A stretch of 63,079 nt of DNA, the filler included, from Octopus bimaculoides (taxonomy: Eukaryota), in assembly GCF_001194135.2 (NCBI RefSeq). It is 4 parts of 3 records of this genome, joined end to end, with 100 filler letters (N's around TTAATTAATTAA, not from the genome) between each part and the next. Parts side by side here need not be neighbours in the genome. Positions count along the whole stretch, not along the records: positions 31,676 to 57,650 come from NC_068997.1; 3 more parts are not named here. One strand, 5' to 3'. The notes under the pieces were generated by a model. It worked only from the letters and a program-made list of their open reading frames with translations. It made no database searches and was not told the DNA's origin. The position numbers were made by a program, and so were the translations under genes. This document shows positions 37,907 through 52,774 of this stretch, one piece after another (within the stretch, counting starts at the first letter, position 1; every line of letters starts with the position of its first letter).

Positions 37907-38751
37907 CAATGTGCAATGGGTAGATTGTTACCGTTTTATATTTTCAATTTCACGCATGTGCATTGTTTGTTTACACAGTGTAGTAGGGTAAGTTGGACAA
38001 CGTTTGTGAGAAAAACAGCACCATGATGCAATTCACTCCGCCAGAAATTTTGAAATGACATGCTGTACTGCTTGGCATTCACACTAGAATCTCCAATACA
38101 AACGTTTCAGTGTTTGGGTGTCAATTTGAGGACATGTACTGAGAGTGATACAAATCAAACATCCAGTCAACATCATGTTGTTTGTAGTGACTACTAGTGA
38201 TGGTGACATTATGCCTCCATTCATCTTCCCACATGGCCTCAGACTCAATACTGAGGTCTACATCAAGTGCCTGGAGGAGGTAGTGCTGCCCTGGGTCAAG
38301 AGGGTGGCTGTTGGAACACCCTATGTCTAGCAACAGGATTCTGCACCATACCACACAAGCAGGAGAACCCAGTCATGGCTGTCAGACAATTTCTGCAGCC
38401 ACATCACCCCTAACATCTGGTCACCTAACTCCCCAGACTGCAACCCCCTTGACTATTATGTGTGGGGTGCAGTTGAGCGAGAGACCAACAAAAGTCCTTG
38501 TAACACCAAAGATGAAGGCAAGGATTATGGCAGCATTCATCGACTTAAACAAGGAAACCATCCAGAAGAGTTGGAGGAAATTCCAAAGTTGTCTAGAGGC
38601 TGTTCTTGAAGCCAATGGTGATTTTATTGAATACTCTTTAGTATTTCAAGACATTTTTTTGTAATTTTGGTAAAAATATCTGTTAAAATGACATGTCAGT
38701 GTTATTTTCATTTTTGCATAATTTAGACGACAATTTCTTCACTGCACCTTG
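37907..38751 (+). mobile_element. Internally deleted maT (DD37D) Tc1/mariner element with both TIRs and TA target duplication
   Basis: TA|CAATGTGCAATGGG ... CACTGCACCTTG|TA; QQD-37aa-D (WSPNSPDCNPLDYYVWG). Confidence 0.92.
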
Positions 38752-38801: not shown

Positions 38802-40070
38802 ATGCATGCGTCACCCAGAGTGTATTTGGTTTGTCGGTTGTGTCAGACGTTGGTTTTTGTTGCTGCTTTGAGGATAGAGACAATGCACTCAAACTTTAGC
38901 GGGTCTGAGTTGTCTTCATCAGAAGAGGAGCTGGTAAGGGCAGTCATAGAGATGGACGGAGTGTTGGAAAAGACAAGGAGTTTTGCTTGGGTTACGGAGA
39001 TGAAGCGAAGGGAGTTAGACTTGGCCGGTCTGAAGGAGTATGAGAAGATGGTACAGAAGGTGGGAGGGGAAGTGAAGCTGTCGCGCCCCCAAAAGAATTA
39101 TGGAGTGAATGGAAAGAAGAACAATCACCTATAAGGTGTTCTTGCTAAAAGGGAAAAAGGCTGAGCAGGTGGAAGCTGAAACGGAAAAAGCACTAAGGGA
39201 GAAGTCAAAAGAAATAATATACATGACGAAAGGAAGAAAATATGGCACAATGGTCGTACAATTTAGAACAGTAGAGGAGGATGGCGAATGTGGTGGTGAA
39301 AACAGAGGAGGTAGTGCTTCTGCCCATACACCTTAGAAGAAAGACTTCCAAGGTGAGGGTAGAAGCAATTCCACTGGATATAGAAGTGGCTTGGGTGGCG
39401 GCAGCTGTCCTTGTTGGTAGTGAGGAGAAGGTAGCTGTCCTCCAAGCCACAGAAACAGAAGGAGGAAGATGGAAAGGAAGGACACTGGAGTTAATCATTC
39501 AAGCGGAGGAGGGTCATCTCGAGAACTTAGCAGAGACGGTGACGTTGGGGGAAATCGTGCTGAGGGTATGGGTAGAGGGCAGACAACCACGTTGTTTTAA
39601 ATGTGGCCAAATGGGCCACATTAGAGCATACTGCCCCCTACAGAGGACAATGGTTGAAGATACTGTTGTGGAGATGGAAGAGAAATGAGAGGAAGAAAGG
39701 AGAAAAAGGAGGAAGACTGGAAGGTTGATTCAGAGAGCAGAAGCAGAAAGAGGAAAAAAAGAAAAACACTGAGTATGATGTGGTACCCCAGTCCAACTCC
39801 ATCCTACCCAAGACCACTCAGATCCACCCTCCCCATACAGACACCAAATCCATCCACAGTAAAAGAGAGAACAGACACCACAAAATTTAGACGACTCTGC
39901 TCCCGGTGAAAAAGGTTATGAATGCATGGAGGAGAGAATAATAACGTTAAGTGATGGAAAAAGAGGAAAAAGGTTAGAACTGAAAGGAAAAAAGGACTTA
40001 GGACTCAGAGGCAGCGAGTGGTGCTACTCAGTGTGGGGTGAGTAGCACACTCTTCATAATATCATTTTCA
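38802..40070 (+). mobile_element. Tx1/L1-like ORF1-containing element, copy 1 (no ORF2 seen)
   Basis: RKYGTMVVQF...KVRVEAIP...LRVWVEGRQPRCFKCGQMGHIRAYCP (CCHC knuckle); 3' stem-loop GTGCTACTC/GAGTAGCAC; begins right after a SINE A head (38765-38801). Confidence 0.75.
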
Positions 40071-45488: not shown

Positions 45489-46823
45489 GTAACAGCTCCG
45501 TGAAGTTGATACGTAGTGATTCTGAGTAGTTTTTGTGCTGCTTTGCAGCGGTTTGGATGTTTACGTGTGTGGTTTGTTTGTACTTTCTCTTCTCATAGGA
45601 GAAGAGAAAGCTGGTTAAAGAATGTCTGAAGACAGTTATAGTTACTCAGACATGTCATCGTCCGAGGAGTTGCTGAGGTAGCAACTTGCAAAGAAACAAG
45701 TGGATATCAGGGAATTCAGAAGACACAGAAGAAATGAACTGAGATGGGTTTGAAGTGAAACTGTCACCCTTGCAAGAGATTAAAAACGGAATAAGGGAAA
45801 AGCTGATAATCTATCGAACCTTTTCGATAAATAAAGGAAGAATAGACGTTGTCACGACAGAACAAATAGAAAAAGCGTTAAAGCAGATTTGGGAAGACAT
45901 AATATGCCTGACTAGAGGTTCAACATTTGGAAGTGGAGGTGAGGTAATGGGGACATAAATAAAGGAAGAATAGACGTTGTCACGACAGAACAAATAGAAA
46001 AAGCGTTAAAGCAGATTTGGGAAGACATAATATGCCTGACTAGAGGTTCAACATTTGGAACAGTGGAGGTGAGGTTTTGTAATGCAGTAGCAGCGTCGAC
46101 AATTCGGAGTGAAGAAGTGGTGCTGTTACCCACATAGAGGCATGAGAACAAGGGTCACGGTTGAAGGAATCCCACCGGAGATTGACGTAGCCTGGGTGGC
46201 AGATGGTAATGGGGACAACATAGTAGTGCTCCAGACCAAGAAAAAAAAGAGTGCGTCAACTGGAGATGATAGTCCAGGATTCAAAAGAAACAATGTTAAA
46301 GATTACGGAAGAAATAATTATGGCTGTCAGGGTGGAAGGAAGAGTTCCACGCTGCTTTAAATGTGGCCTGAAGGGACACATAAGAGCAGAATGTATATCA
46401 AAGCCTAGAAAAAAGCGAGCAGAAAGGAAGTAACCAAAAAAGAAAAGTAGCAGAAATAGGACAAAGTATATTGGAACTGCGGGGTATGATAATGCGGAGG
46501 AACATCACTCGTGTGTAATACCAGACAAGAAGCAGGAGGAAAAAATACAAGAATATGGGGTTGGATTTTATTTTTGGGAGGTGGACTGCAGTTGGAGCTC
46601 ATTCCCAGAATTTACTACATACAATAGGTGGCTGGAGGAAACAGGTATCGATGTGTTAGAAGGTTCAGGATTTAAAAAGTAGAAAATGAGGCCACTCATA
46701 AGTGGGGGCGAGTGGTTCTATTTCCAGGTCTTCATACATTATAACATTCATTTTATTTTCTATGTTTTATGTCCCACGTTTTGTCATCTCTATGTTTAGC
46801 CCCCAGTGGGCAATAAAGAAATT
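45489..46823 (+). mobile_element. Tx1/L1-like ORF1-only element, copy 2, inserted inside a SINE D head
   Basis: RVTVEGIPPEIDVAWV...VRVEGRVPRCFKCGLKGHIRAEC; 3' stem-loop GCCACTC/GAGTGGT; AATAAA at 46812; SINE D is split at TTAGCGGT (45481-45488) and resumes GGTATTTCGTC at 46824. Confidence 0.8.
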
Positions 46824-48233
46824 GGTATTTCGTCTCTGTCTTTATGTTCTGAGTTCAAATTTCCACCAAGGTCGACTTTGCCTTTCATCCTTTTCAGGGT
46901 CGATGTAATCGACTTTTAATCCCTTTGTCCCCTCTATAGTTATGTAAGAATTGCTAAAGAATCCAATAGTAGCAATTCTACAAAATCAAATTCTTTCATA
47001 TAATAAAGACACGAAAGATTACTTCAGCAAAGTTAGGACCACAAGGGAGGAGACTTTTACTAAGCGTACCCATTTCCTAACTCCTTATCAATTGTTAAAG
47101 ACAAATATCTTTAATCTATCCTTCATACCTCAGTATTCTTTGCATTATACTGCACCACTAATTGCATCTTAGCACCAACCAACACCCATCTCTTTCATGC
47201 CAACTTCTGCTCATTACTACATACCACTGAGTCACTATTCAGCAAGAAACTGGTATAAAAGGGGCAGCAGTAGAAATTCAGGGACAATTTGAGAAAGAAT
47301 GCCAAAACGCATGCATTTCCAAACCTGTAAAATTTAGATATCATTAATCTCAGCCTCTATGAGGAATATCTGTGTATATGTTAAGGTCAATGTATTCAAA
47401 TTTTGTGAATACATGCCTGAGAACACTACCACTTAGAACTACTTACATGAATTCACCTATCCAAATAAAAGTATTGACAGAAAAATATGGATTTTGTAGA
47501 TGCCTCAGCAGACATGATTGGGAAAGTTTAGATGCTCACCCAATCAAATCAACTCATTACTAGTACATTAGTCTTGAGGTACCCGTAACATAGTATTTCT
47601 AAAATTTTAGTTACTATGTGGCCACTGAATGACGAATTGCTTGGTTTTGGACTCAATTCCATTGTAGCGTACACAGGGCAAGGTATTTAGTTAATCAAAA
47701 GTTTGGAGAGTGAGATTTTGCAAGTGTAAACTGGTAGCTTCTATTTTGGTGCCGAGTAGTAGTCTTAATCCATTGCTTGATTTAACATCACTTGGTCCTT
47801 GGTTTTTCTTTAGCAAAGTTCAATGTTGCAAGCATCTGTATTGTTACTATTTCAGATGAATTACCTTTCTGAGCCTGAAAAAAATTTAGCCAACGAAAAT
47901 CTTCCACCATTTGGTCATGTTTAAACACCAACTTAAGAGATAACCCAAGCTGATGCATTGCCTGTTTCTCAACCTATTTGACTAACAATCCACTTAGAAG
48001 GAAAAAAATCTAAATAGAACTTTACTGCAAAATTCATTTACTTGTTACCTACACCTGAACTTAGAAAAACTGTTTTCAAAGACTACTTGCTGGGATGAAT
48101 ATGTACTCCTTAGTCATCCAAGATTTAAGAAACCTCTTGAGATTCAATTAAAATTTGGGACAAAAGGTTTTCACTAAATCCCAAGTTTTTGTAGAATGCC
48201 TACATTAAATATGGGAATATTTGATTGTGTTAA

Positions 48234-48334: not shown

Positions 48335-50042
48335 TTAAAATTGTTTTAGTGCTATTTTATACCATGCTCACTTATAAATCAAAAATCCTACTTTTGTTCA
48401 AGGATCTATAAAAGTGAATTATGTACCATAGTGCTATTAACTCAAATATTTTCTCTATCATCTCCATTTGAAAACCATACAATTTCAATGTCTTTTCAAA
48501 ATCACTTTGGTAGAAGCTGTGGGACACTCAGCTCCCTTAATGATTAGTATAGAATATACTAATCAACAAATGCTATACTCGTTATAGACCTACTCCAGGT
48601 ATTTAAAACCATACATGTGAAGAGATCTTTGCTTAAACTTCAAATTAAAAGTATTTAAACATATTTTGTAAATGCTTACTGCAACATACAATAAAATGTC
48701 ACCCTTTCAGAACAAACCATTTACACTCAATCTGAAATAAATTGTAACTTAAATGTTCAACAAATGTAGATCTTAATCAGAACATGGCCATTACCACACT
48801 TCCCTGCATCCTAGTTACAGACATCTAGTATTTGAGATTCTATCTGGTAGTCAATAATACCTTCGTAATTTGTAAAGCAGTGTGTATATTTAGAGTTCCA
48901 ATGAACAGGCTATGCCTTGAAACCTAACCCTTTCGTTACCAACCCATCCAAAACTGATTGAAATTGATTTTGCTCATGTTGCAAAGACATATTTGAGCGC
49001 AAATGTCATAAGTATGCTTGTGAAATGCATTTTCACTCTAAACAACTAAATTACACTATCCAACAGTATTTTATATGGTATCTGACACCAGTCTAGAGAT
49101 TTTTCCACTTTGAAAAATTTTTTTCTTTACAAGAGACAGAAAATACCAGTATCAAGCATTGAGCTTGAAGCCAAAGGATTTTCAAAAGATGGCATCCAGC
49201 AAAATATACAGTGGACATAAACCATGTGCACGATTATGACTCAGATATTTCAATTTCTGAAAGTAAAACAATTCCGACAAGTGATGATTGCGATGAATGG
49301 AAAAAAAAAAAAAAAAAAAAAAAGCACCCGAATGTAGCAAGAATAAGAAAATTGTTTTCCTTAGTTTTTAGGAAGAGACTAAACCAGTCATGGTGTAGGC
49401 AAATGAAAGCACTAGATTTCTCCTCTTTGCTTGCAGCAATTACTGCGGAAACAAAATCATAATGCAGGACAGAGGGAAAAAGACTTTTGCTCTCCCGCAC
49501 TTTACATTTTTTTTTTAATTCACTTGTTAGGTGTGTGACATTTTGATAATTCATATTGTGAATCAATCATGTATCTCTTGTAGCTGATGACACTTCATTT
49601 TCTAGCTTTCTTCAAAAATTCTCGTAATTTACACACTTCTATACTAAAATTTTGTTGTATACTCAAATGTTAGCTACTAACTCATTTTCTAATGCTAACC
49701 ATTAGGTTAAAACTGGATACTGCAGCGGTCATCACCTATGCAACACTGCCACCCATACATATGTCAGATGGATAGCAATTCAATGCAAAGTACAAATTGA
49801 ATTTATGGAGACAGCTTTCTATTGTATGCAAAAGATATTTGATAATGCACAGAATTGTTATTTAATAGAAGTTAGTGGCAATTTTAATATTAATGCAAGT
49901 GCAAAAAGCAAACCTAACTATATTAAGCAATGAGAACACCATTACTATATAACTGTACAAGTATAAAGAACTGATACTATTGACCCCATATACGGCATAG
50001 CTAATATGGTTTGAAATAACCAAACCGGATTTGATTACTTAC

Positions 50043-50064
50043 CTTTTCCAAGAGTGTGATATAT
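50043..50064 (-). other. Candidate 22-nt alternative microexon of TDP-43
   Basis: TGCTTGTTTTTCTTTCAG|ATATATCACACTCTTGGAAAAG|GTAAGT: consensus acceptor and donor on the TARDBP strand, ~2.1 kb after the stop. No transcript evidence. Confidence 0.5.
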
Positions 50065-51108
50065 CTGAAAGAAAAACAAGCACTAACAAGAAGTTTCTCA
50101 CTGTATGGCTTCCAAAAGGCATAGGGGAAGGAGAAAAATTGCAGAAATATATAAAGTAAATTTCAACACCTTAAAAAATGCTATTTAAAATAAATAAAAA
50201 AAAATATGAAAGGCCAACATCTAAATTTATCCCTGAGATACAGTCAATGGCACTGTATTAAATGTCAGTTTTTTTTCTTTTTTTTTCATAAAAATAAAAA
50301 AAAGGTGTTTACAAATAGCCAACTATGTTATCACAGACAGGTTGCAGACAGCAGCAGCTGTTTTAGGGCAGCAGTGCACGCAGCTGAAGAAACAGACACC
50401 GTAATGGAGGAAATTGTTGAATTTCGCTGTGAAGAAAAACAGTTTCGTCATCATTACGTCGAAATAGGTATCACTTGATACGTCCCTCTCCACCAATTGA
50501 AATGCTGATGAACCATGGCAATCAGGGTTCTTCTGTTGCTGGGAGAAGAACCCATGTCGAGTCATTTGAAATATTTAAAAAAAAAAAAAAATGCAATATG
50601 AAAATTACTCAGTTGGAATGACAAAGTATATTGGAGGGTAATCAGTTGGAATTCTAAAAGTATGAAAGTCAGTAATTTTCCACTATTATTGGTATAATGC
50701 AGCATCACTAGTGTTCATACCCATTTCTCATTACTTGAAAATGAAACTTTTTTTTTTTAAATGCTACAATCCAAATGGGATCTGAAATTTCCCAACAGGT
50801 TATCTTTAAACTCATCTGAACAATTTGATTTTAATATGAACATTACCCTAAACACTATAAATTTTCACAAAACAATTAGCAATCATCTCTTATAATCATT
50901 ATGATGCCAAGCATAAAGGGCAGTTTGCTGTGGAGTGGGATGAAAAAAAAAAATGCAATTTTACCGATACTTGAACCTGTTTCATTTTTAAACAAGTCCC
51001 AGACATTCAACTAAATACACAATTTTCTTTGTATTCTTGCCCAGCCCCTGCAACAAAGAGCAAACTCTCTCAACTGCCACAAAACACAAGACCTTCATGC
51101 ATTTTATA

Positions 51109-51114
51109 TTTATT
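51109..51114 (-). terminator. Candidate poly(A) signal in the TDP-43 3'UTR
   Basis: AATAAA on the sense strand followed ~17-32 nt later by a GU-rich element (GTCTTGTGTTTTGTGG). Confidence 0.35.
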
Positions 51115-52129
51115 TACTTTCTCTACAGATCAGCTCCCATTCAACACGCAAAAAAAGGAGACATCCGTCACCCATTCAACAAAGTTGATTCAGTTCGTTC
51201 ACATCTGTCATGCGTGCATCAGTCCGTGCGTGCAATCCAAACGACTGGCAACTATTTACATATTACCAATGGTCACCCACCACACAACTAAAATGATCTT
51301 CACTGACCCAGACCAAAGCTAACACTCATTCAAAAGAAAGAAAAAAAATAAAATAAAATAAAGGGAAATGTTTACAAATAGGAGATATGGAAAAGAAAAG
51401 TCAGTAAGGGATTCTTTTCAGGCAATACAGCAGCAGAAAAATCAAACGATGAGGGGGGAGATGAAAGTATATTTTAGTGGAATTTCTAGGAGAGTCACAT
51501 TACCGAGCAGGAAAAAAAAAATGAATAGATGAAATGATAGAAAGCTGCTCATCCAAGAGCAAAATGAAGGAAATGAAGAAGGAATGTATAGGGTAAGGGG
51601 AGACAATTTAGACAGTTCACAATGTCTCTCTTCAAAGTAAAGCTGCACAAAAAATTTCACTTAACAATACAAAATTGCACTGAATCAAGTGAAAATGCAT
51701 GATATAGAGATGTATGTAGAGGGACTGTTCTAAAAGTGCTGCTGTCTAAAGTTGGTCGGCAGTTAAGGGAAAGTGAAGCATGACATCACTCACAACATTC
51801 AACAAACATGTATAACAAAAGTATGAAGAGGGGGAAAGAAAGGAGAGGGGGGGATCAAAATAAAGATGACAGTCCAGGTAATAAAATGTCAGTGTGTATA
51901 CATCATATATAAACATACATATATAATACATACACACTTAAAATTAGAAAACTGGACTGAGAGTGATTAAATGAAAAGACCTTGACTTATGGCAAATTTG
52001 ACAAGATCAAAAAGAAACGTGACAACTGCTAAAGAACAGTGAATCAGGTATGAATGGGACTGAGTGAAGAAAAGACAAAAAGATGGAGGAAAAAATATAT
52101 TAAAATGCATTGCAAACAATGATCAGCCG

Positions 52130-52774
52130 TTAATTCCATCCACCAGATTTTGATAGTGAACCCCCCCAATTTGCTGAATGCCCTTGACCATTTTCTGCAG
52201 GGCCACCCCAACCCAAATAATTGTTATTGGGACCACTACCAATACTACCAAAGCTTTGGTTGCTATTTTGACTGTTAGACTCTCCACCTCCACCTTGTCC
52301 CATTCCTAATGGCCCCCACCCCCCAGGCCCACTAAGCATGGCCTGAGCAGCTGCCAACATTGCTGGATTTATCTGAAAGTTGCCAAAATTCATCGGGGGT
52401 CCATTCATGTTGCCATTACTATTGCGGTTTCCCTGATTCCACCCACCCTGTCCATAACCTTGATTATAGTTGCCTTGAGGACCACGCCTATCCCAGTTGC
52501 CAGAGTTGCCGCTATTATGTTTATCTGCAGGTTTCGGCAGTGCACTGCTCACATGAACGCTGACATTCTTCACAATGTGGTCTTCGCCACACAAAGCTTG
52601 AGCAACATCAGGATCAGTGAATGTAACAAATGCGAACGCCCGGAATGGTTTGGGGATAAAGACATCAATGACTTCACCATATTTAGAGAAGTAAGTGAGA
52701 AGGTCATCTTCAGTCATGTCTTCTGTACACCGGCCAACAAACACTTTACTGTTTACTTGCTGTTGACTACCATC
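52130..52774 (-). CDS. TARDBP: TDP-43 coding exon 4 (RRM2 plus G/N-rich low-complexity C-terminus, to stop TAA)
   Basis: TTCTAG|GAT acceptor, in frame. Encodes DGSQQQVNSKVFVGRC...RAFAFVTF, the conserved segment MNFGNFQINPAMLAAAQAML..WG, and ends SKSGGWN*. Joined CDS is 1188 nt = 395 aa. Confidence 0.96.
   Translation of the reverse strand, partial: DGSQQQVNSKVFVGRCTEDMTEDDLLTYFSKYGEVIDVFIPKPFRAFAFVTFTDPDVAQALCGEDHIVKNVSVHVSSALPKPADKHNSGNSGNWDRRGPQGNYNQGYGQGGWNQGNRNSNGNMNGPPMNFGNFQINPAMLAAAQAMLSGPGGWGPLGMGQGGGGESNSQNSNQSFGSIGSGPNNNYLGWGGPAENGQGHSANWGGSLSKSGGWN

What the first reader, a model, noticed from the sequence alone, without database searches (positions are those of the whole stretch)
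50043..52553. Hidden short-isoform route for TDP-43: internal donor at the end of RRM2 plus a 22-nt downstream microexon
Seen: on the TARDBP strand a 22-nt stretch (50064-50043) is bracketed by TGCTTGTTTTTCTTTCAG and AAG|GTAAGT, the best donor I found in the 3' region. The last coding exon holds a GTGAG-type donor, CAT|GTGAGC at 52553/52552, right after His255 at the end of RRM2, phase 0. Joining them gives ...VSVH-IYHTLGK-, dropping the whole low-complexity domain. Known: vertebrate TARDBP makes C-terminally truncated isoforms by splicing from within the last coding exon into the 3'UTR, and neural microexons controlled by Srrm2/3/4 eMIC proteins have a UGC just upstream of the acceptor, as here at about -19. 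Inference: a comparable, possibly neural, isoform switch or NMD-linked autoregulatory circuit exists in this animal.
Basis: partly seen in the sequence, partly recalled or inferred. Interest (0 to 1): 0.8.

Follow-up and report, generated by a model that had tools for sequence, protein, structure and literature searches.

The report
Conserved splice-donor motif in TARDBP 3′UTR
In the octopus TDP-43 gene, the proposed 22-base "microexon" is most likely just the last stretch of a long, conserved 3′ untranslated region that ends at an unusually perfect, conserved splice-donor (U1-binding) motif, and nothing found here supports the proposed short protein isoform.

Summary
The window is Octopus bimaculoides TARDBP (minus strand).

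The microexon route is not supported:
- The only O. bimaculoides transcript available runs colinear from 52774 to at least 50943, unspliced at 52553.
- Octopus-genus conservation is uniformly high from the stop codon to ~49900, with no exon island.
- The TTTCAG acceptor and the 22-mer are absent in Argonauta.
- The UGC is uninformative: 40% of AGs have one upstream.
- The GTGAGC conservation is explained by coding.

What is real is the donor. AG|GTAAGTAA at 50042 is the only site in the 26-kb piece with ≥9 contiguous U1-complementary bases. Argonauta keeps it at the syntenic position. Two decapods have an equivalent unique site 0.85–1.2 kb past a deeply conserved poly(A) block (51332–51078: AATAAA, UG-rich tail, UUGAAUG repeats).

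Best reading: a vertebrate-like TARDBP autoregulatory 3′UTR. TDP-43 sites sit at a proximal poly(A) site, and a U1/5′ss element in the read-through UTR marks that isoform for 3′UTR splicing or nuclear retention. No junction-level RNA data could be reached, so use of any of these sites remains untested.

The parts
52130..52774 (-). Last coding exon of TARDBP (RRM2 plus the Gly/Asn-rich low-complexity domain; stop codon 52132-52130). It continues without a break into the 3'UTR.
   Evidence: tblastn with human TDP-43 and exon reconstruction. Transcript L006 is colinear 52774-50943.
52547..52555 (-). No evidence that it is used.
   Evidence: PWM rank 16 of 1517. Conserved at the nucleotide level in gene-1 orthologs but no more than neighbouring codons; GTTAGT in paralog 2. 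Transcripts L006 and L009 are unspliced here.
52060..52079 (-). Acceptor-like site TTTGTCTTTTCTTCACTCAG| (first exon base 52059), 70 nt past the stop codon. It is only a candidate.
   Evidence: PWM 7.5, rank 5 of 1428. Argonauta has CCTGTCTTTTCTTCACTCAG|TCC, 8.0.
51078..51332 (-). Deeply conserved 3'UTR block: two GTTGAATGGG(T/A)G repeats (51180-51169, 51145-51134), AATAAA (51114-51109) and the downstream element TGTGTTTTGTG. Likely the proximal poly(A) site plus the TDP-43-binding region.
   Evidence: 85% identity over 255 nt to Sepia and 90% over 152 nt to a decapod transcript. Alignment A2. The paralog-2 transcript L010 carries a poly(A) tail ~20 nt after the homologous AATAAA. TTGAATG clusters here.
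49850..51077 (-). Extended (read-through) 3'UTR. It is transcribed at least to 50943 and conserved within Octopus to ~49900.
   Evidence: L006 extends 150+ nt beyond the proximal poly(A) site. Identity profiles. Argonauta aligns at 51438-50972 and 50394-50197.
50065..50082 (-). Present only in Octopus species.
   Evidence: PWM 4.5, rank 28 of 1428. O. vulgaris 4.8. No AG at the aligned position in Argonauta.
50043..50064 (-). The 22-mer ATATATCACACTCTTGGAAAAG. Best read as the last 22 nt of UTR before the donor motif, not as an exon.
   Evidence: Identical in O. vulgaris and O. sinensis. Not conserved in Argonauta apart from TTGGA-AG next to the donor.
50035..50045 (-). Ultra-consensus 5' splice-site / U1 snRNA-complementary element AAG|GTAAGTAA (GT at 50042-50041), with 9 contiguous bases complementary to the U1 5' end.
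   Evidence: The only such site on either strand of the 26-kb piece. Conserved at the syntenic position in Argonauta as CAG|GTAAGTAATC. A unique equivalent site exists in Sepia and in a second decapod at similar distances from the conserved AATAAA.
49861..49888 (-). Two ATTAAA hexamers (49888-49883, 49866-49861), candidate distal poly(A) signals 155-180 nt past the U1 site, where Octopus-genus conservation starts to decay.
   Evidence: No transcript evidence.
47129..47249 (-). Downstream exon used by the O. vulgaris 420-aa gene model (acceptor TTTTATACCAG|, donor CTGAG|GTATGA). A possible splice partner for read-through transcripts. Not conserved in Argonauta.
   Evidence: tblastn of the P0121 tail, sequences, coordinates, no Argonauta match.

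Best explanation
The 22-nt stretch is not a microexon. It is the last 22 nt of the long, read-through form of the TARDBP 3'UTR, which ends at a selected, ultra-consensus 5' splice-site (U1 snRNP-binding) element at 50042.

Proposed circuit. Steps 1-3 are shown at the sequence or transcript level; steps 4-5 are inferred.
(1) The mRNA has a deeply conserved proximal poly(A) site (AATAAA at 51114).
(2) That site is embedded in UUGAAUG / UG-rich motifs of the kind TDP-43 binds.
(3) Some transcripts read through this site into an extended UTR (L006).
(4) When TDP-43 is abundant, it occupies the block and disfavors the proximal site, as at pA1 of the vertebrate gene.
(5) The read-through RNA then exposes the U1 site about 1.07 kb further on, and this makes the isoform unproductive.

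My preferred version, at roughly 55:45, is that 50042 acts as the donor of a 3'UTR intron. It would splice into downstream sequence, for example the exon at 47249-47129 or onward toward the tandem paralog. That would place an exon junction far downstream of the stop codon and trigger NMD, and/or produce conjoined transcripts. The alternative version is that U1 binds without splicing and causes poly(A) inhibition or nuclear retention and decay.
For: - Uniqueness. 50042 is the only site with >=9 contiguous U1-complementary bases on either strand of the piece. By composition, ~0.38 per strand are expected, placed anywhere.
- Conservation. In Argonauta, AG|GTAAGTAATC (12/12) is kept at the syntenic position, while the ~60 nt before it are scrambled and alignability stops right after it.
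- Parallel in decapods. Sepia and a second decapod each have exactly one such site on the gene strand and none on the other strand. The sites lie 1128 and ~1218 nt past the conserved AATAAA, against 1072 nt in O. bimaculoides and 849 nt in Argonauta. From one search's expectation, my arithmetic gives a chance of about 0.006 that a site falls in a 400-nt positional window.
- Long UTR. The L006 transcript is colinear to at least 50943, past the proximal poly(A) site. Octopus-genus identity is >=0.92 from the stop codon to ~49900.
- Proximal poly(A) block. It is 85-90% identical between octopods and decapods. The homologous site is polyadenylated in a paralog-2 transcript. Five of the eight TTGAATG on this strand cluster in 51802-51004. 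GAAUG-containing GU-rich RNA is an established TDP-43 RRM ligand (PMC8523171).
- Precedents. The vertebrate circuit is documented in PMC12987623, PMC3950720 and PMC4937342. Consensus 5'ss motifs in terminal exons cause nuclear retention and decay (PMC4380460, PMC9074902).
- Splicing out of the last exon. The O. vulgaris gene model splices from the TARDBP last exon into downstream intergenic exons.
Against: - No transcript or junction read shows that 50042 is used or bound. No contig covering 50940-49800 could be retrieved.
- No downstream acceptor is conserved in Argonauta.
- The octopod and decapod sites are not alignable base for base, so homology is not demonstrated.
- Within Octopus and within decapods, conservation continues 150-230 nt past the site. 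That fits either a terminal exon or conserved intronic flanks.
- L006 ends at a T-run, so the true extent of the UTR is unknown.
- TDP-43 binding to the block is inferred from motifs only.
- The PWM is generic.
- The O. vulgaris model uses a different donor (52239, inside the LCD) and may be an annotation artefact.
Confidence: 0.55

Rival explanations
1. One reading: an alternative intron from 52552 to 50065 joins RRM2 to a 22-nt microexon (50064-50043), which splices further downstream and yields an LCD-less TDP-43 ending ...VSVHIYHTLGK+. A variant has 50064 opening an alternative terminal exon, giving ...IYHTLGKGK-stop. The isoform might be neural or NMD-coupled.
For: All three motifs exist, and the pair is rare in shuffles. 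The motifs are intact in O. vulgaris and O. sinensis. A strong downstream 5'ss would help exon definition of a weak acceptor. Vertebrates make sTDP-43 in just this manner, with a truncated exon 6, a small cryptic exon 7 and intron 7 (PMC12987623). LCD-less models are annotated in other molluscs, for example the Gigantopelta 280-aa isoform X2. With the exon at 47249 as partner, the product would end ...GKVSC-stop.
Against: The available transcripts are unspliced at 52553. The acceptor and the 22-mer are absent in Argonauta, so the peptide is not conserved. The acceptor is the weakest of the three UTR candidates. There is no exon-like conservation island. The UGC is uninformative. The length of 22 nt is not a multiple of 3. 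The internal donor's conservation is explained by coding. The RefSeq names for O. bimaculoides and O. sinensis carry no 'isoform' label, which suggests a single annotated protein; this is weak evidence. The gene models that do truncate the LCD use other donors and acceptors.
Confidence: 0.08
2. Unspliced U1-site version: the motif never serves as a donor. U1 snRNP bound in the terminal exon suppresses the nearby distal poly(A) signals and/or triggers nuclear retention and exosome decay of the long-UTR isoform.
For: There are 9-10 contiguous U1-complementary bases, more than ordinary donors need. Candidate poly(A) hexamers lie 155-180 nt downstream in Octopus and 410-506 nt downstream in the decapods. 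Conservation continues ~150-230 nt past the site, as expected for a terminal exon. No conserved downstream acceptor was found. The mechanism is documented in PMC4380460 and PMC9074902. An snRNP-sensed 3'UTR autoregulatory element exists in U11/U12-65K (PMC5473595).
Against: Argonauta has no canonical poly(A) hexamer for at least 1.5 kb after the site, and its alignability ends at the site. A consensus donor in a read-through transcript running toward a same-strand paralog would be expected to find an acceptor. No RNA data are available.
Confidence: 0.25
3. Coincidence or other function: the GTAAGTAA motif is conserved as part of a generally conserved 3'UTR (for example a miRNA or RBP site, or no function at all), and the decapod parallel is chance.
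For: The whole UTR is conserved within Octopus. The decapod-decapod background identity of 79% makes retention of a 10-mer unremarkable. The octopod and decapod sites are not alignable. By composition, 0.38 such sites are expected per strand.
Against: In Argonauta the motif is an island of 12/12 identity inside otherwise diverged sequence. The motif is exactly the U1 complement. In all five loci it is the only such site, it is always on the gene strand, and it always falls in the same position window.
Confidence: 0.12

Closest known systems
Vertebrate TARDBP 3'UTR autoregulation and sTDP-43 (TDPBR; pA1/pA2/pA4; alternative introns 6 and 7; cryptic exon 7)
   Same: It is the orthologous gene. 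The single long last exon carries the LCD, the stop codon and a long conserved 3'UTR. A proximal poly(A) site sits in UG/GAAUG-rich sequence, a read-through long-UTR isoform exists, and there is a strong 5'ss inside the UTR region.
   Different: There is no sequence homology to the vertebrate TDPBR. The conserved donor lies ~1 kb downstream of the proximal poly(A) site, not upstream of it, so its splicing would not remove that site. No internal LCD-removing intron is evidenced. A tandem TARDBP paralog lies downstream on the same strand. TDP-43 dependence is untested.
Consensus 5' splice-site motif in terminal exons: U1-70K/ZFC3H1-dependent nuclear retention and decay, and U1-mediated poly(A) inhibition
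   Same: A perfect U1-complementary motif lies in what may be a terminal exon, upstream of candidate poly(A) signals (PMC4380460, PMC9074902).
   Different: In those studies the motif is mostly a mark of misprocessed RNA. Here it is conserved in a specific regulatory gene, which implies a programmed role. It is not shown that the motif stays unspliced.
U11/U12-65K and U11-48K autoregulation through a conserved snRNP-binding 5'ss-like enhancer (USSE) in the 3'UTR
   Same: A conserved 5'ss-like element in the 3'UTR region governs 3'UTR isoform choice and nuclear retention as part of a feedback loop (PMC5473595).
   Different: That element is a tandem U12-type motif sensed by the gene's own product complex. 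Here the motif is U1-type, and the presumed sensor (TDP-43) would act at a separate element ~1 kb upstream.
eMIC (Srrm2/3/4)-dependent neural microexons
   Same: The length of 22 nt is within the microexon range. A UGC lies upstream of the AG, followed by a strong donor.
   Different: The length is not a multiple of 3. The UGC lies upstream of the pyrimidine tract and is expected by chance (40% background). Neither the exon nor its acceptor is conserved beyond the genus. The site lies in a 3'UTR, not between coding exons. Neural inclusion is untested.

Membership tests
sTDP-43-type short isoform route (internal donor in last coding exon, then cryptic 3'UTR exon, then 3'UTR intron) | Internal 5' splice site downstream of RRM2 that is actually used | tested here: inconclusive
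   The motif CAT|GTGAGC is present and conserved, but the conservation is no greater than that of neighbouring codons. The two transcript contigs available (L006, L009) are unspliced there.
sTDP-43-type short isoform route (internal donor in last coding exon, then cryptic 3'UTR exon, then 3'UTR intron) | Conserved 3' splice site defining the cryptic exon (in vertebrates the junctions and the exon 7 sequence are highly conserved, PMC12987623) | tested here: not met
   The 50064 acceptor scores 4.5 and is conserved only within Octopus. Argonauta has no AG at the aligned position.
sTDP-43-type short isoform route (internal donor in last coding exon, then cryptic 3'UTR exon, then 3'UTR intron) | Conserved novel C-terminal peptide | tested here: not met
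   The sequence encoding IYHTLGK is absent or scrambled in Argonauta. No protein carrying the junction was found, although that search was lossy.
sTDP-43-type short isoform route (internal donor in last coding exon, then cryptic 3'UTR exon, then 3'UTR intron) | Junction-spanning RNA evidence | not testable with these tools
   Raw RNA-seq reads are not queryable. No assembled contig over 50940-49800 is on record.
eMIC-dependent neural microexon | UGC-containing enhancer close to the 3' splice site, above background | tested here: inconclusive
   TGC is present at -18..-16, but 40% of all AGs on this strand have a TGC within 40 nt upstream.
eMIC-dependent neural microexon | Exon and flanks conserved across lineages; frame-preserving length | tested here: not met
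   The 22-mer and the acceptor are not conserved in Argonauta. 22 nt is not a multiple of 3.
eMIC-dependent neural microexon | Neural-specific inclusion dependent on Srrm2/3/4 | not testable with these tools
   No tissue-resolved expression data were available.
TARDBP-type 3'UTR autoregulation | Cluster of TDP-43-type binding motifs at or near the proximal poly(A) site | tested here: met
   Tested at the sequence level only. Two GTTGAATGGG(T/A)G repeats, GTTGTGTGGTGGGTG and TGTGTTTTGTG flank AATAAA in a block that is 85-90% identical between octopods and decapods. TTGAATG clusters here. GAAUG/GU-rich RNA is an established ligand (PMC8523171).
TARDBP-type 3'UTR autoregulation | Alternative use of proximal versus distal 3' ends | tested here: inconclusive
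   The homologous AATAAA is used in paralog-2 transcript L010. L006 reads at least 150 nt past the gene-1 site. No poly(A)-tailed gene-1 contig was obtained.
TARDBP-type 3'UTR autoregulation | TDP-43-dependent activation of a 3'UTR intron or unproductive isoform | not testable with these tools
   This requires knockdown or overexpression, CLIP, or reporters.
5'ss-motif / U1 snRNP element in a 3'UTR | Extended complementarity to the U1 snRNA 5' end | tested here: met
   There are 9-10 contiguous complementary bases, and the site is unique in each of five loci. The U1 5'-end sequence is from general knowledge.
5'ss-motif / U1 snRNP element in a 3'UTR | Located in a terminal exon upstream of a poly(A) site and left unspliced | tested here: inconclusive
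   ATTAAA at 49888 and 49866, and the conservation decay at ~49900, fit this feature. There is no transcript evidence, and Argonauta lacks a nearby hexamer.

The most novel reading that the evidence does not exclude
Coleoid cephalopods carry an ancient TDP-43 autoregulatory module, at least as old as the octopod-decapod split. It is built differently from the vertebrate one. A near-invariant UUGAAUG/UG-rich proximal poly(A) block acts as the TDP-43 sensor. An ultra-consensus U1 site ~1 kb downstream converts read-through transcripts into unproductive RNAs, possibly by splicing them into the tandem TARDBP paralog. That would couple the dosage of the two paralogs through conjoined transcripts.
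Probability: 0.3. Interest if true: 0.65.

Novelty: new member of a known kind. Interest (0 to 1): 0.4.

Why it matters
TDP-43 dosage control is central to ALS/FTD biology, and its autoregulatory 3'UTR has been dissected almost only in mammals. A protostome lineage with a large nervous system appears to keep, or to have reinvented, a poly(A)-site sensor plus a U1/5'ss 'kill switch' in the same gene. That would show which features of the circuit are essential (sensor at the proximal poly(A) site, an unproductive read-through isoform) and which are incidental (intron 7 spanning pA1, the sTDP-43 peptide). The near-invariant 255-nt block gives a compact, testable candidate binding region. For the scan itself, the result is a caution: a splice-site-like pair in a 3'UTR can be half real. 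Here the donor is selected and the acceptor is not.

Tried and rejected
- A protein search with RRM2 plus the hypothetical tail returned only exon-sized ORFs from other invertebrates. It did not even return the Octopus proteins, so its negative result is not informative.
- An exact look-up of the 80-aa 3'UTR ORF and a similarity search with concatenated small ORFs from 50700-49800 found no assembled contigs over the site. The 54-aa ORF look-up only returned L006 again.
- L007 (an Octopus transcript) has only 180 nt of 3'UTR.
- The Gigantopelta short-isoform locus could not be retrieved.
- The Sepia gene models P0125 and P0126, with LCD-internal donors, were considered as evidence for an intron-6-like event. 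I rejected this as weak. The acceptor CTGCCTGTTAATGAAG| has no pyrimidine tract, and decapod transcript L009 reads straight through it.
It uses a different donor (52239) and skips the 22-mer, ending 120 nt upstream of the paralog's ATG, so it is probably a conjoined or artefactual model.
- Synonymous-site conservation of GTGAGC is not distinguishable from that of its neighbours.
- A conserved decapod island 0.9 kb past their donor has no exon-like boundaries.
- An Rfam scan of the whole piece gave no family.
- An RNA fold of 50115-49975 gave z = 0.38. A local hairpin pairs the donor with downstream sequence, but it is not conserved in Argonauta.
Full report
**Identity of the locus.** The piece (31676-57650) is 100% identical to Octopus bimaculoides GCA_001194135.2 CM046617.1. 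TARDBP lies on the minus strand with four coding exons: 55715-55478, 54274-54111, 53302-53162 and 52774-52130. The 395-aa product equals XP_014772917.1.

**Check of the observation.**
- CAT|GTGAGC follows His255 in phase 0.
- The 22-mer at 50064-50043 is flanked by TGCTTGTTTTTCTTTCAG and GTAAGT.
- The join reads VSVH-IYHTLGK with one base left over. Without use of the second donor the frame ends IYHTLGKGK-stop.

I scored sites with a generic PWM whose frequencies I recalled, so ranks are approximate. The 50042 donor ties for best of 1517 GTs on the strand. The 52552 donor ranks 16th, and the acceptor ranks only 28th of 1428. A pair this good within 60 nt appeared in 0 of 40 shuffles at the observed thresholds, but in 20% of shuffles once the donor threshold was relaxed. 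The rarity therefore comes from the donor. The UGC is uninformative, because 40% of all AGs have a TGC within 40 nt upstream.

**Transcript evidence.**
- One O. bimaculoides transcript contig could be retrieved (L006, Logan SRR32601320). The three real introns are removed. It is colinear with the genome from 52774 to 50943, so it is not spliced at 52553, and its 3'UTR is at least 1.19 kb long. It ends at a T-run, so the true 3' end is unknown.
- A decapod transcript (L009) is likewise colinear with the Sepia pharaonis genome through the last exon and 3'UTR.
- Attempts to pull assembled contigs across 50940-49800 through their small ORFs found nothing. Junction-level evidence for or against use of 50064 or 50043 was therefore not obtainable, and the negative result is weak.

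**Comparative evidence within Octopus.** O. vulgaris and O. sinensis keep the 22-mer and both flanking motifs, with one T>C change in the pyrimidine tract. These genomes are close, about 88.6% identical over 5.9 kb including introns. The identity profile is more telling. Real introns run at ~0.7-0.9. From the stop codon to ~49900 identity is 0.92-1.00 without interruption, and it then decays to 0.88 and to ~0.79. The 22-mer is not an island. Two ATTAAA hexamers (49888, 49866) sit where conservation starts to fall. This pattern fits a single ~2.3-kb 3'UTR.

**Comparative evidence beyond the genus.**
- Argonauta hians aligns at 52787-51766, 51438-50972 and 50394-50197.
- Direct alignment of the next 200 nt shows an anchor (CCCCTATGC), then scrambled sequence, then TTGGACAG|GTAAGTAATC at the syntenic position, then unrelated GC-richer sequence.
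- The donor is therefore conserved (CAG|GTAAGT, 12.9 bits), while the acceptor and the 22-mer are not; the aligned position reads CTTGCAA|GTA.
The site at 52059, 70 nt past the stop codon, scores 7.5 and is conserved in Argonauta. The site at 50927 scores 7.6 and is Octopus-only.
- The internal GTG AGC is invariant in Octopus, Argonauta, Sepia and a second decapod. About 9 of 24 neighbouring codons are equally invariant, and paralog 2 has GTT AGT, so coding constraint suffices to explain it.

**The donor is the real feature.** I scanned for runs complementary to the U1 snRNA 5' end (CAGGTAAGTAT; the U1 sequence is from general knowledge).
- 50042 (AAG|GTAAGTAA, 9 contiguous) is the only site with at least 9 on either strand of the 26-kb piece.
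- The same holds for O. vulgaris (L001 16308), Argonauta (L003 15485, 10 contiguous), Sepia (L004 18569, G|GTAAGTAT, 9) and a second decapod (L011 12822, AG|GTAAGTAT, 10). In each locus there is exactly one such site on the gene strand and none on the other strand. About 0.38 per strand per 26 kb are expected by composition.
- In all lineages the site lies 0.85-1.22 kb downstream of one conserved AATAAA.
- The octopod and decapod sites are not alignable base for base, so I claim a positional parallel, not proven homology.

**The conserved poly(A) block.**
- Window 51332-51078 is 85% identical to Sepia over 255 nt and 90% identical to the decapod transcript over 152 nt. It is the only non-coding sequence alignable across the octopod-decapod divide.
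- It contains two GTTGAATGGG(T/A)G repeats, GTTGTGTGGTGGGTG, AATAAA (51114) and TGTGTTTTGTG.
- Its core survives in the tandem paralog, whose transcript (L010) carries a poly(A) tail ~20 nt after the homologous AATAAA. The gene-1 site is therefore very probably a functional proximal poly(A) site, and L006 is a read-through isoform.
- TTGAATG is not enriched in the window overall, but five of its eight occurrences on this strand fall in 51802-51004.
- GU-rich RNA containing GAAUG is an established ligand of the TDP-43 RRMs (PMC8523171). The original NMR structure with GUGUGAAUGAAU is from my own knowledge.

**Gene models that truncate the LCD.**
- The O. vulgaris 420-aa model (CAI9735501.1) leaves the canonical frame at an LCD-internal donor (window 52239). 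It then uses an exon at 47249-47129 and ends in an exon 120 nt upstream of the ATG of a second, tandem TDP-43 gene. It skips the 22-mer and looks like a conjoined or read-through model. It does suggest that splicing from the TARDBP last exon into the intergenic region has been seen or predicted.
- The two Sepia models use a donor at GAC|GTAATC and an acceptor without a pyrimidine tract, and transcript L009 reads through that acceptor. I give these models little weight.
- An LCD-less RefSeq isoform exists in the gastropod Gigantopelta (280 aa), so short isoforms in molluscs are plausible in general.

**Mechanism.**
- *Shown:* a conserved proximal poly(A) block with TDP-43-type motifs, a read-through transcript, and a unique conserved U1-complementary site ~1 kb further on.
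- *Inferred:* TDP-43 binding at the block disfavors the proximal site, as at pA1 in vertebrates (PMC12987623; PMC3950720 and PMC4937342). The read-through RNA is then made unproductive by the U1 site.
- This could happen by splicing from 50043 into downstream sequence, leading to NMD or conjoined transcripts. It could also happen by U1 binding without splicing, leading to poly(A) inhibition and nuclear retention or decay (PMC4380460, PMC9074902; compare the U11-sensed element of U11/U12-65K, PMC5473595).
- I slightly prefer the splicing version. A consensus donor in a transcript heading toward a same-strand paralog should find an acceptor, and Argonauta alignability stops exactly at the site. 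The retention version fits the ~150-230 nt of conservation beyond the site in Octopus and in decapods.

**Verdict.** The specific short-isoform/microexon interpretation is not supported by any evidence I could reach, and it is contradicted by the lack of conservation of its acceptor and peptide. The donor, and the general idea of a vertebrate-like regulatory 3'UTR, are supported. No literature on cephalopod TARDBP processing was found. I rate this a new member of a known kind (autoregulated RBP 3'UTR) of moderate interest, pending RNA-level tests.

Noticed in passing
window 51078-51332 (minus strand): A 255-nt 3'UTR block is 85-90% identical between octopods and decapods. It contains two GTTGAATGGG(T/A)G repeats, AATAAA and TGTGTTTTGTG, and is probably the proximal poly(A) site plus the TDP-43-binding region. 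Its core is also retained in the tandem paralog, where a transcript is polyadenylated right after it.
   Followed up: yes
window 51004-51802 (minus strand): Five of the eight TTGAATG heptamers on this strand cluster in 800 nt of the 3'UTR, and four of them bracket the proximal AATAAA. Overall the window shows no enrichment (13 observed against 9.3 expected).
   Followed up: partly
L001 37931 onward; L003 21636 onward; Sepia contig CAHIKZ030001383.1: Coleoids carry a second TDP-43 gene in tandem on the same strand. It lies ~24 kb downstream in O. vulgaris and 8 kb downstream in Argonauta, and Sepia has two genes on one contig. It lies just outside this piece. The O. vulgaris 420-aa model joins gene 1 to an exon 120 nt upstream of the paralog's ATG.
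   Followed up: partly
window 52060-52079 (acceptor; first exon base 52059): A strong acceptor-like site 70 nt past the stop codon is conserved in Argonauta. Joined to the 52552 donor it would open a 30-codon frame (SHSYLIHCSLAVVTFLFDLVKFAISQGLFI-stop). There is no evidence that it is used.
   Followed up: partly
window 52234-52243 and 47129-47249 (minus strand): The donor ATTG|GTAGTG inside the LCD and a downstream exon with good splice sites are used by the O. vulgaris gene model. In O. bimaculoides that exon has indels and an early stop (…FGSIVSC-stop), so it is non-coding if it is real at all.
   Followed up: partly
window 49975-50045 (minus strand): The donor GGUAAGUAAUCAAAU can pair with GUUUGGUUAUUU just downstream in a local hairpin. 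The fold of the 141-nt region is not better than shuffles (z = 0.38), and the hairpin is not conserved in Argonauta.
   Followed up: partly
proteins P0005-P0030: Many arthropod TDP-43 genes have an intron inside RRM2 right after ...GEDHI(V/I)KG; the ORFs read into intron sequence there. Cephalopods lack that intron.
   Followed up: no
window 38311-38664, 39281-39688, 45827-46075: The intergenic region holds transposon debris. There is a mariner-like transposase C-terminus, a CCHC zinc-knuckle gag-like ORF, and a ~120-nt tandem duplication. These identifications were made by eye and were not run against Pfam.
   Followed up: no
P0229, P0183, P0186: LCD-less or LCD-shortened TDP-43 models are annotated in other molluscs, for example Gigantopelta aegis isoform X2 (280 aa, ending ...QQNRKVCVRR). 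The locus could not be retrieved to see how the isoform is built.
   Followed up: partly
The word-indexed protein search with a 72-aa query did not return the Octopus TDP-43 proteins, which are ~90% identical to that query. A full-length query found them at once. Negative results from short queries in that tool should not be trusted.
   Followed up: yes
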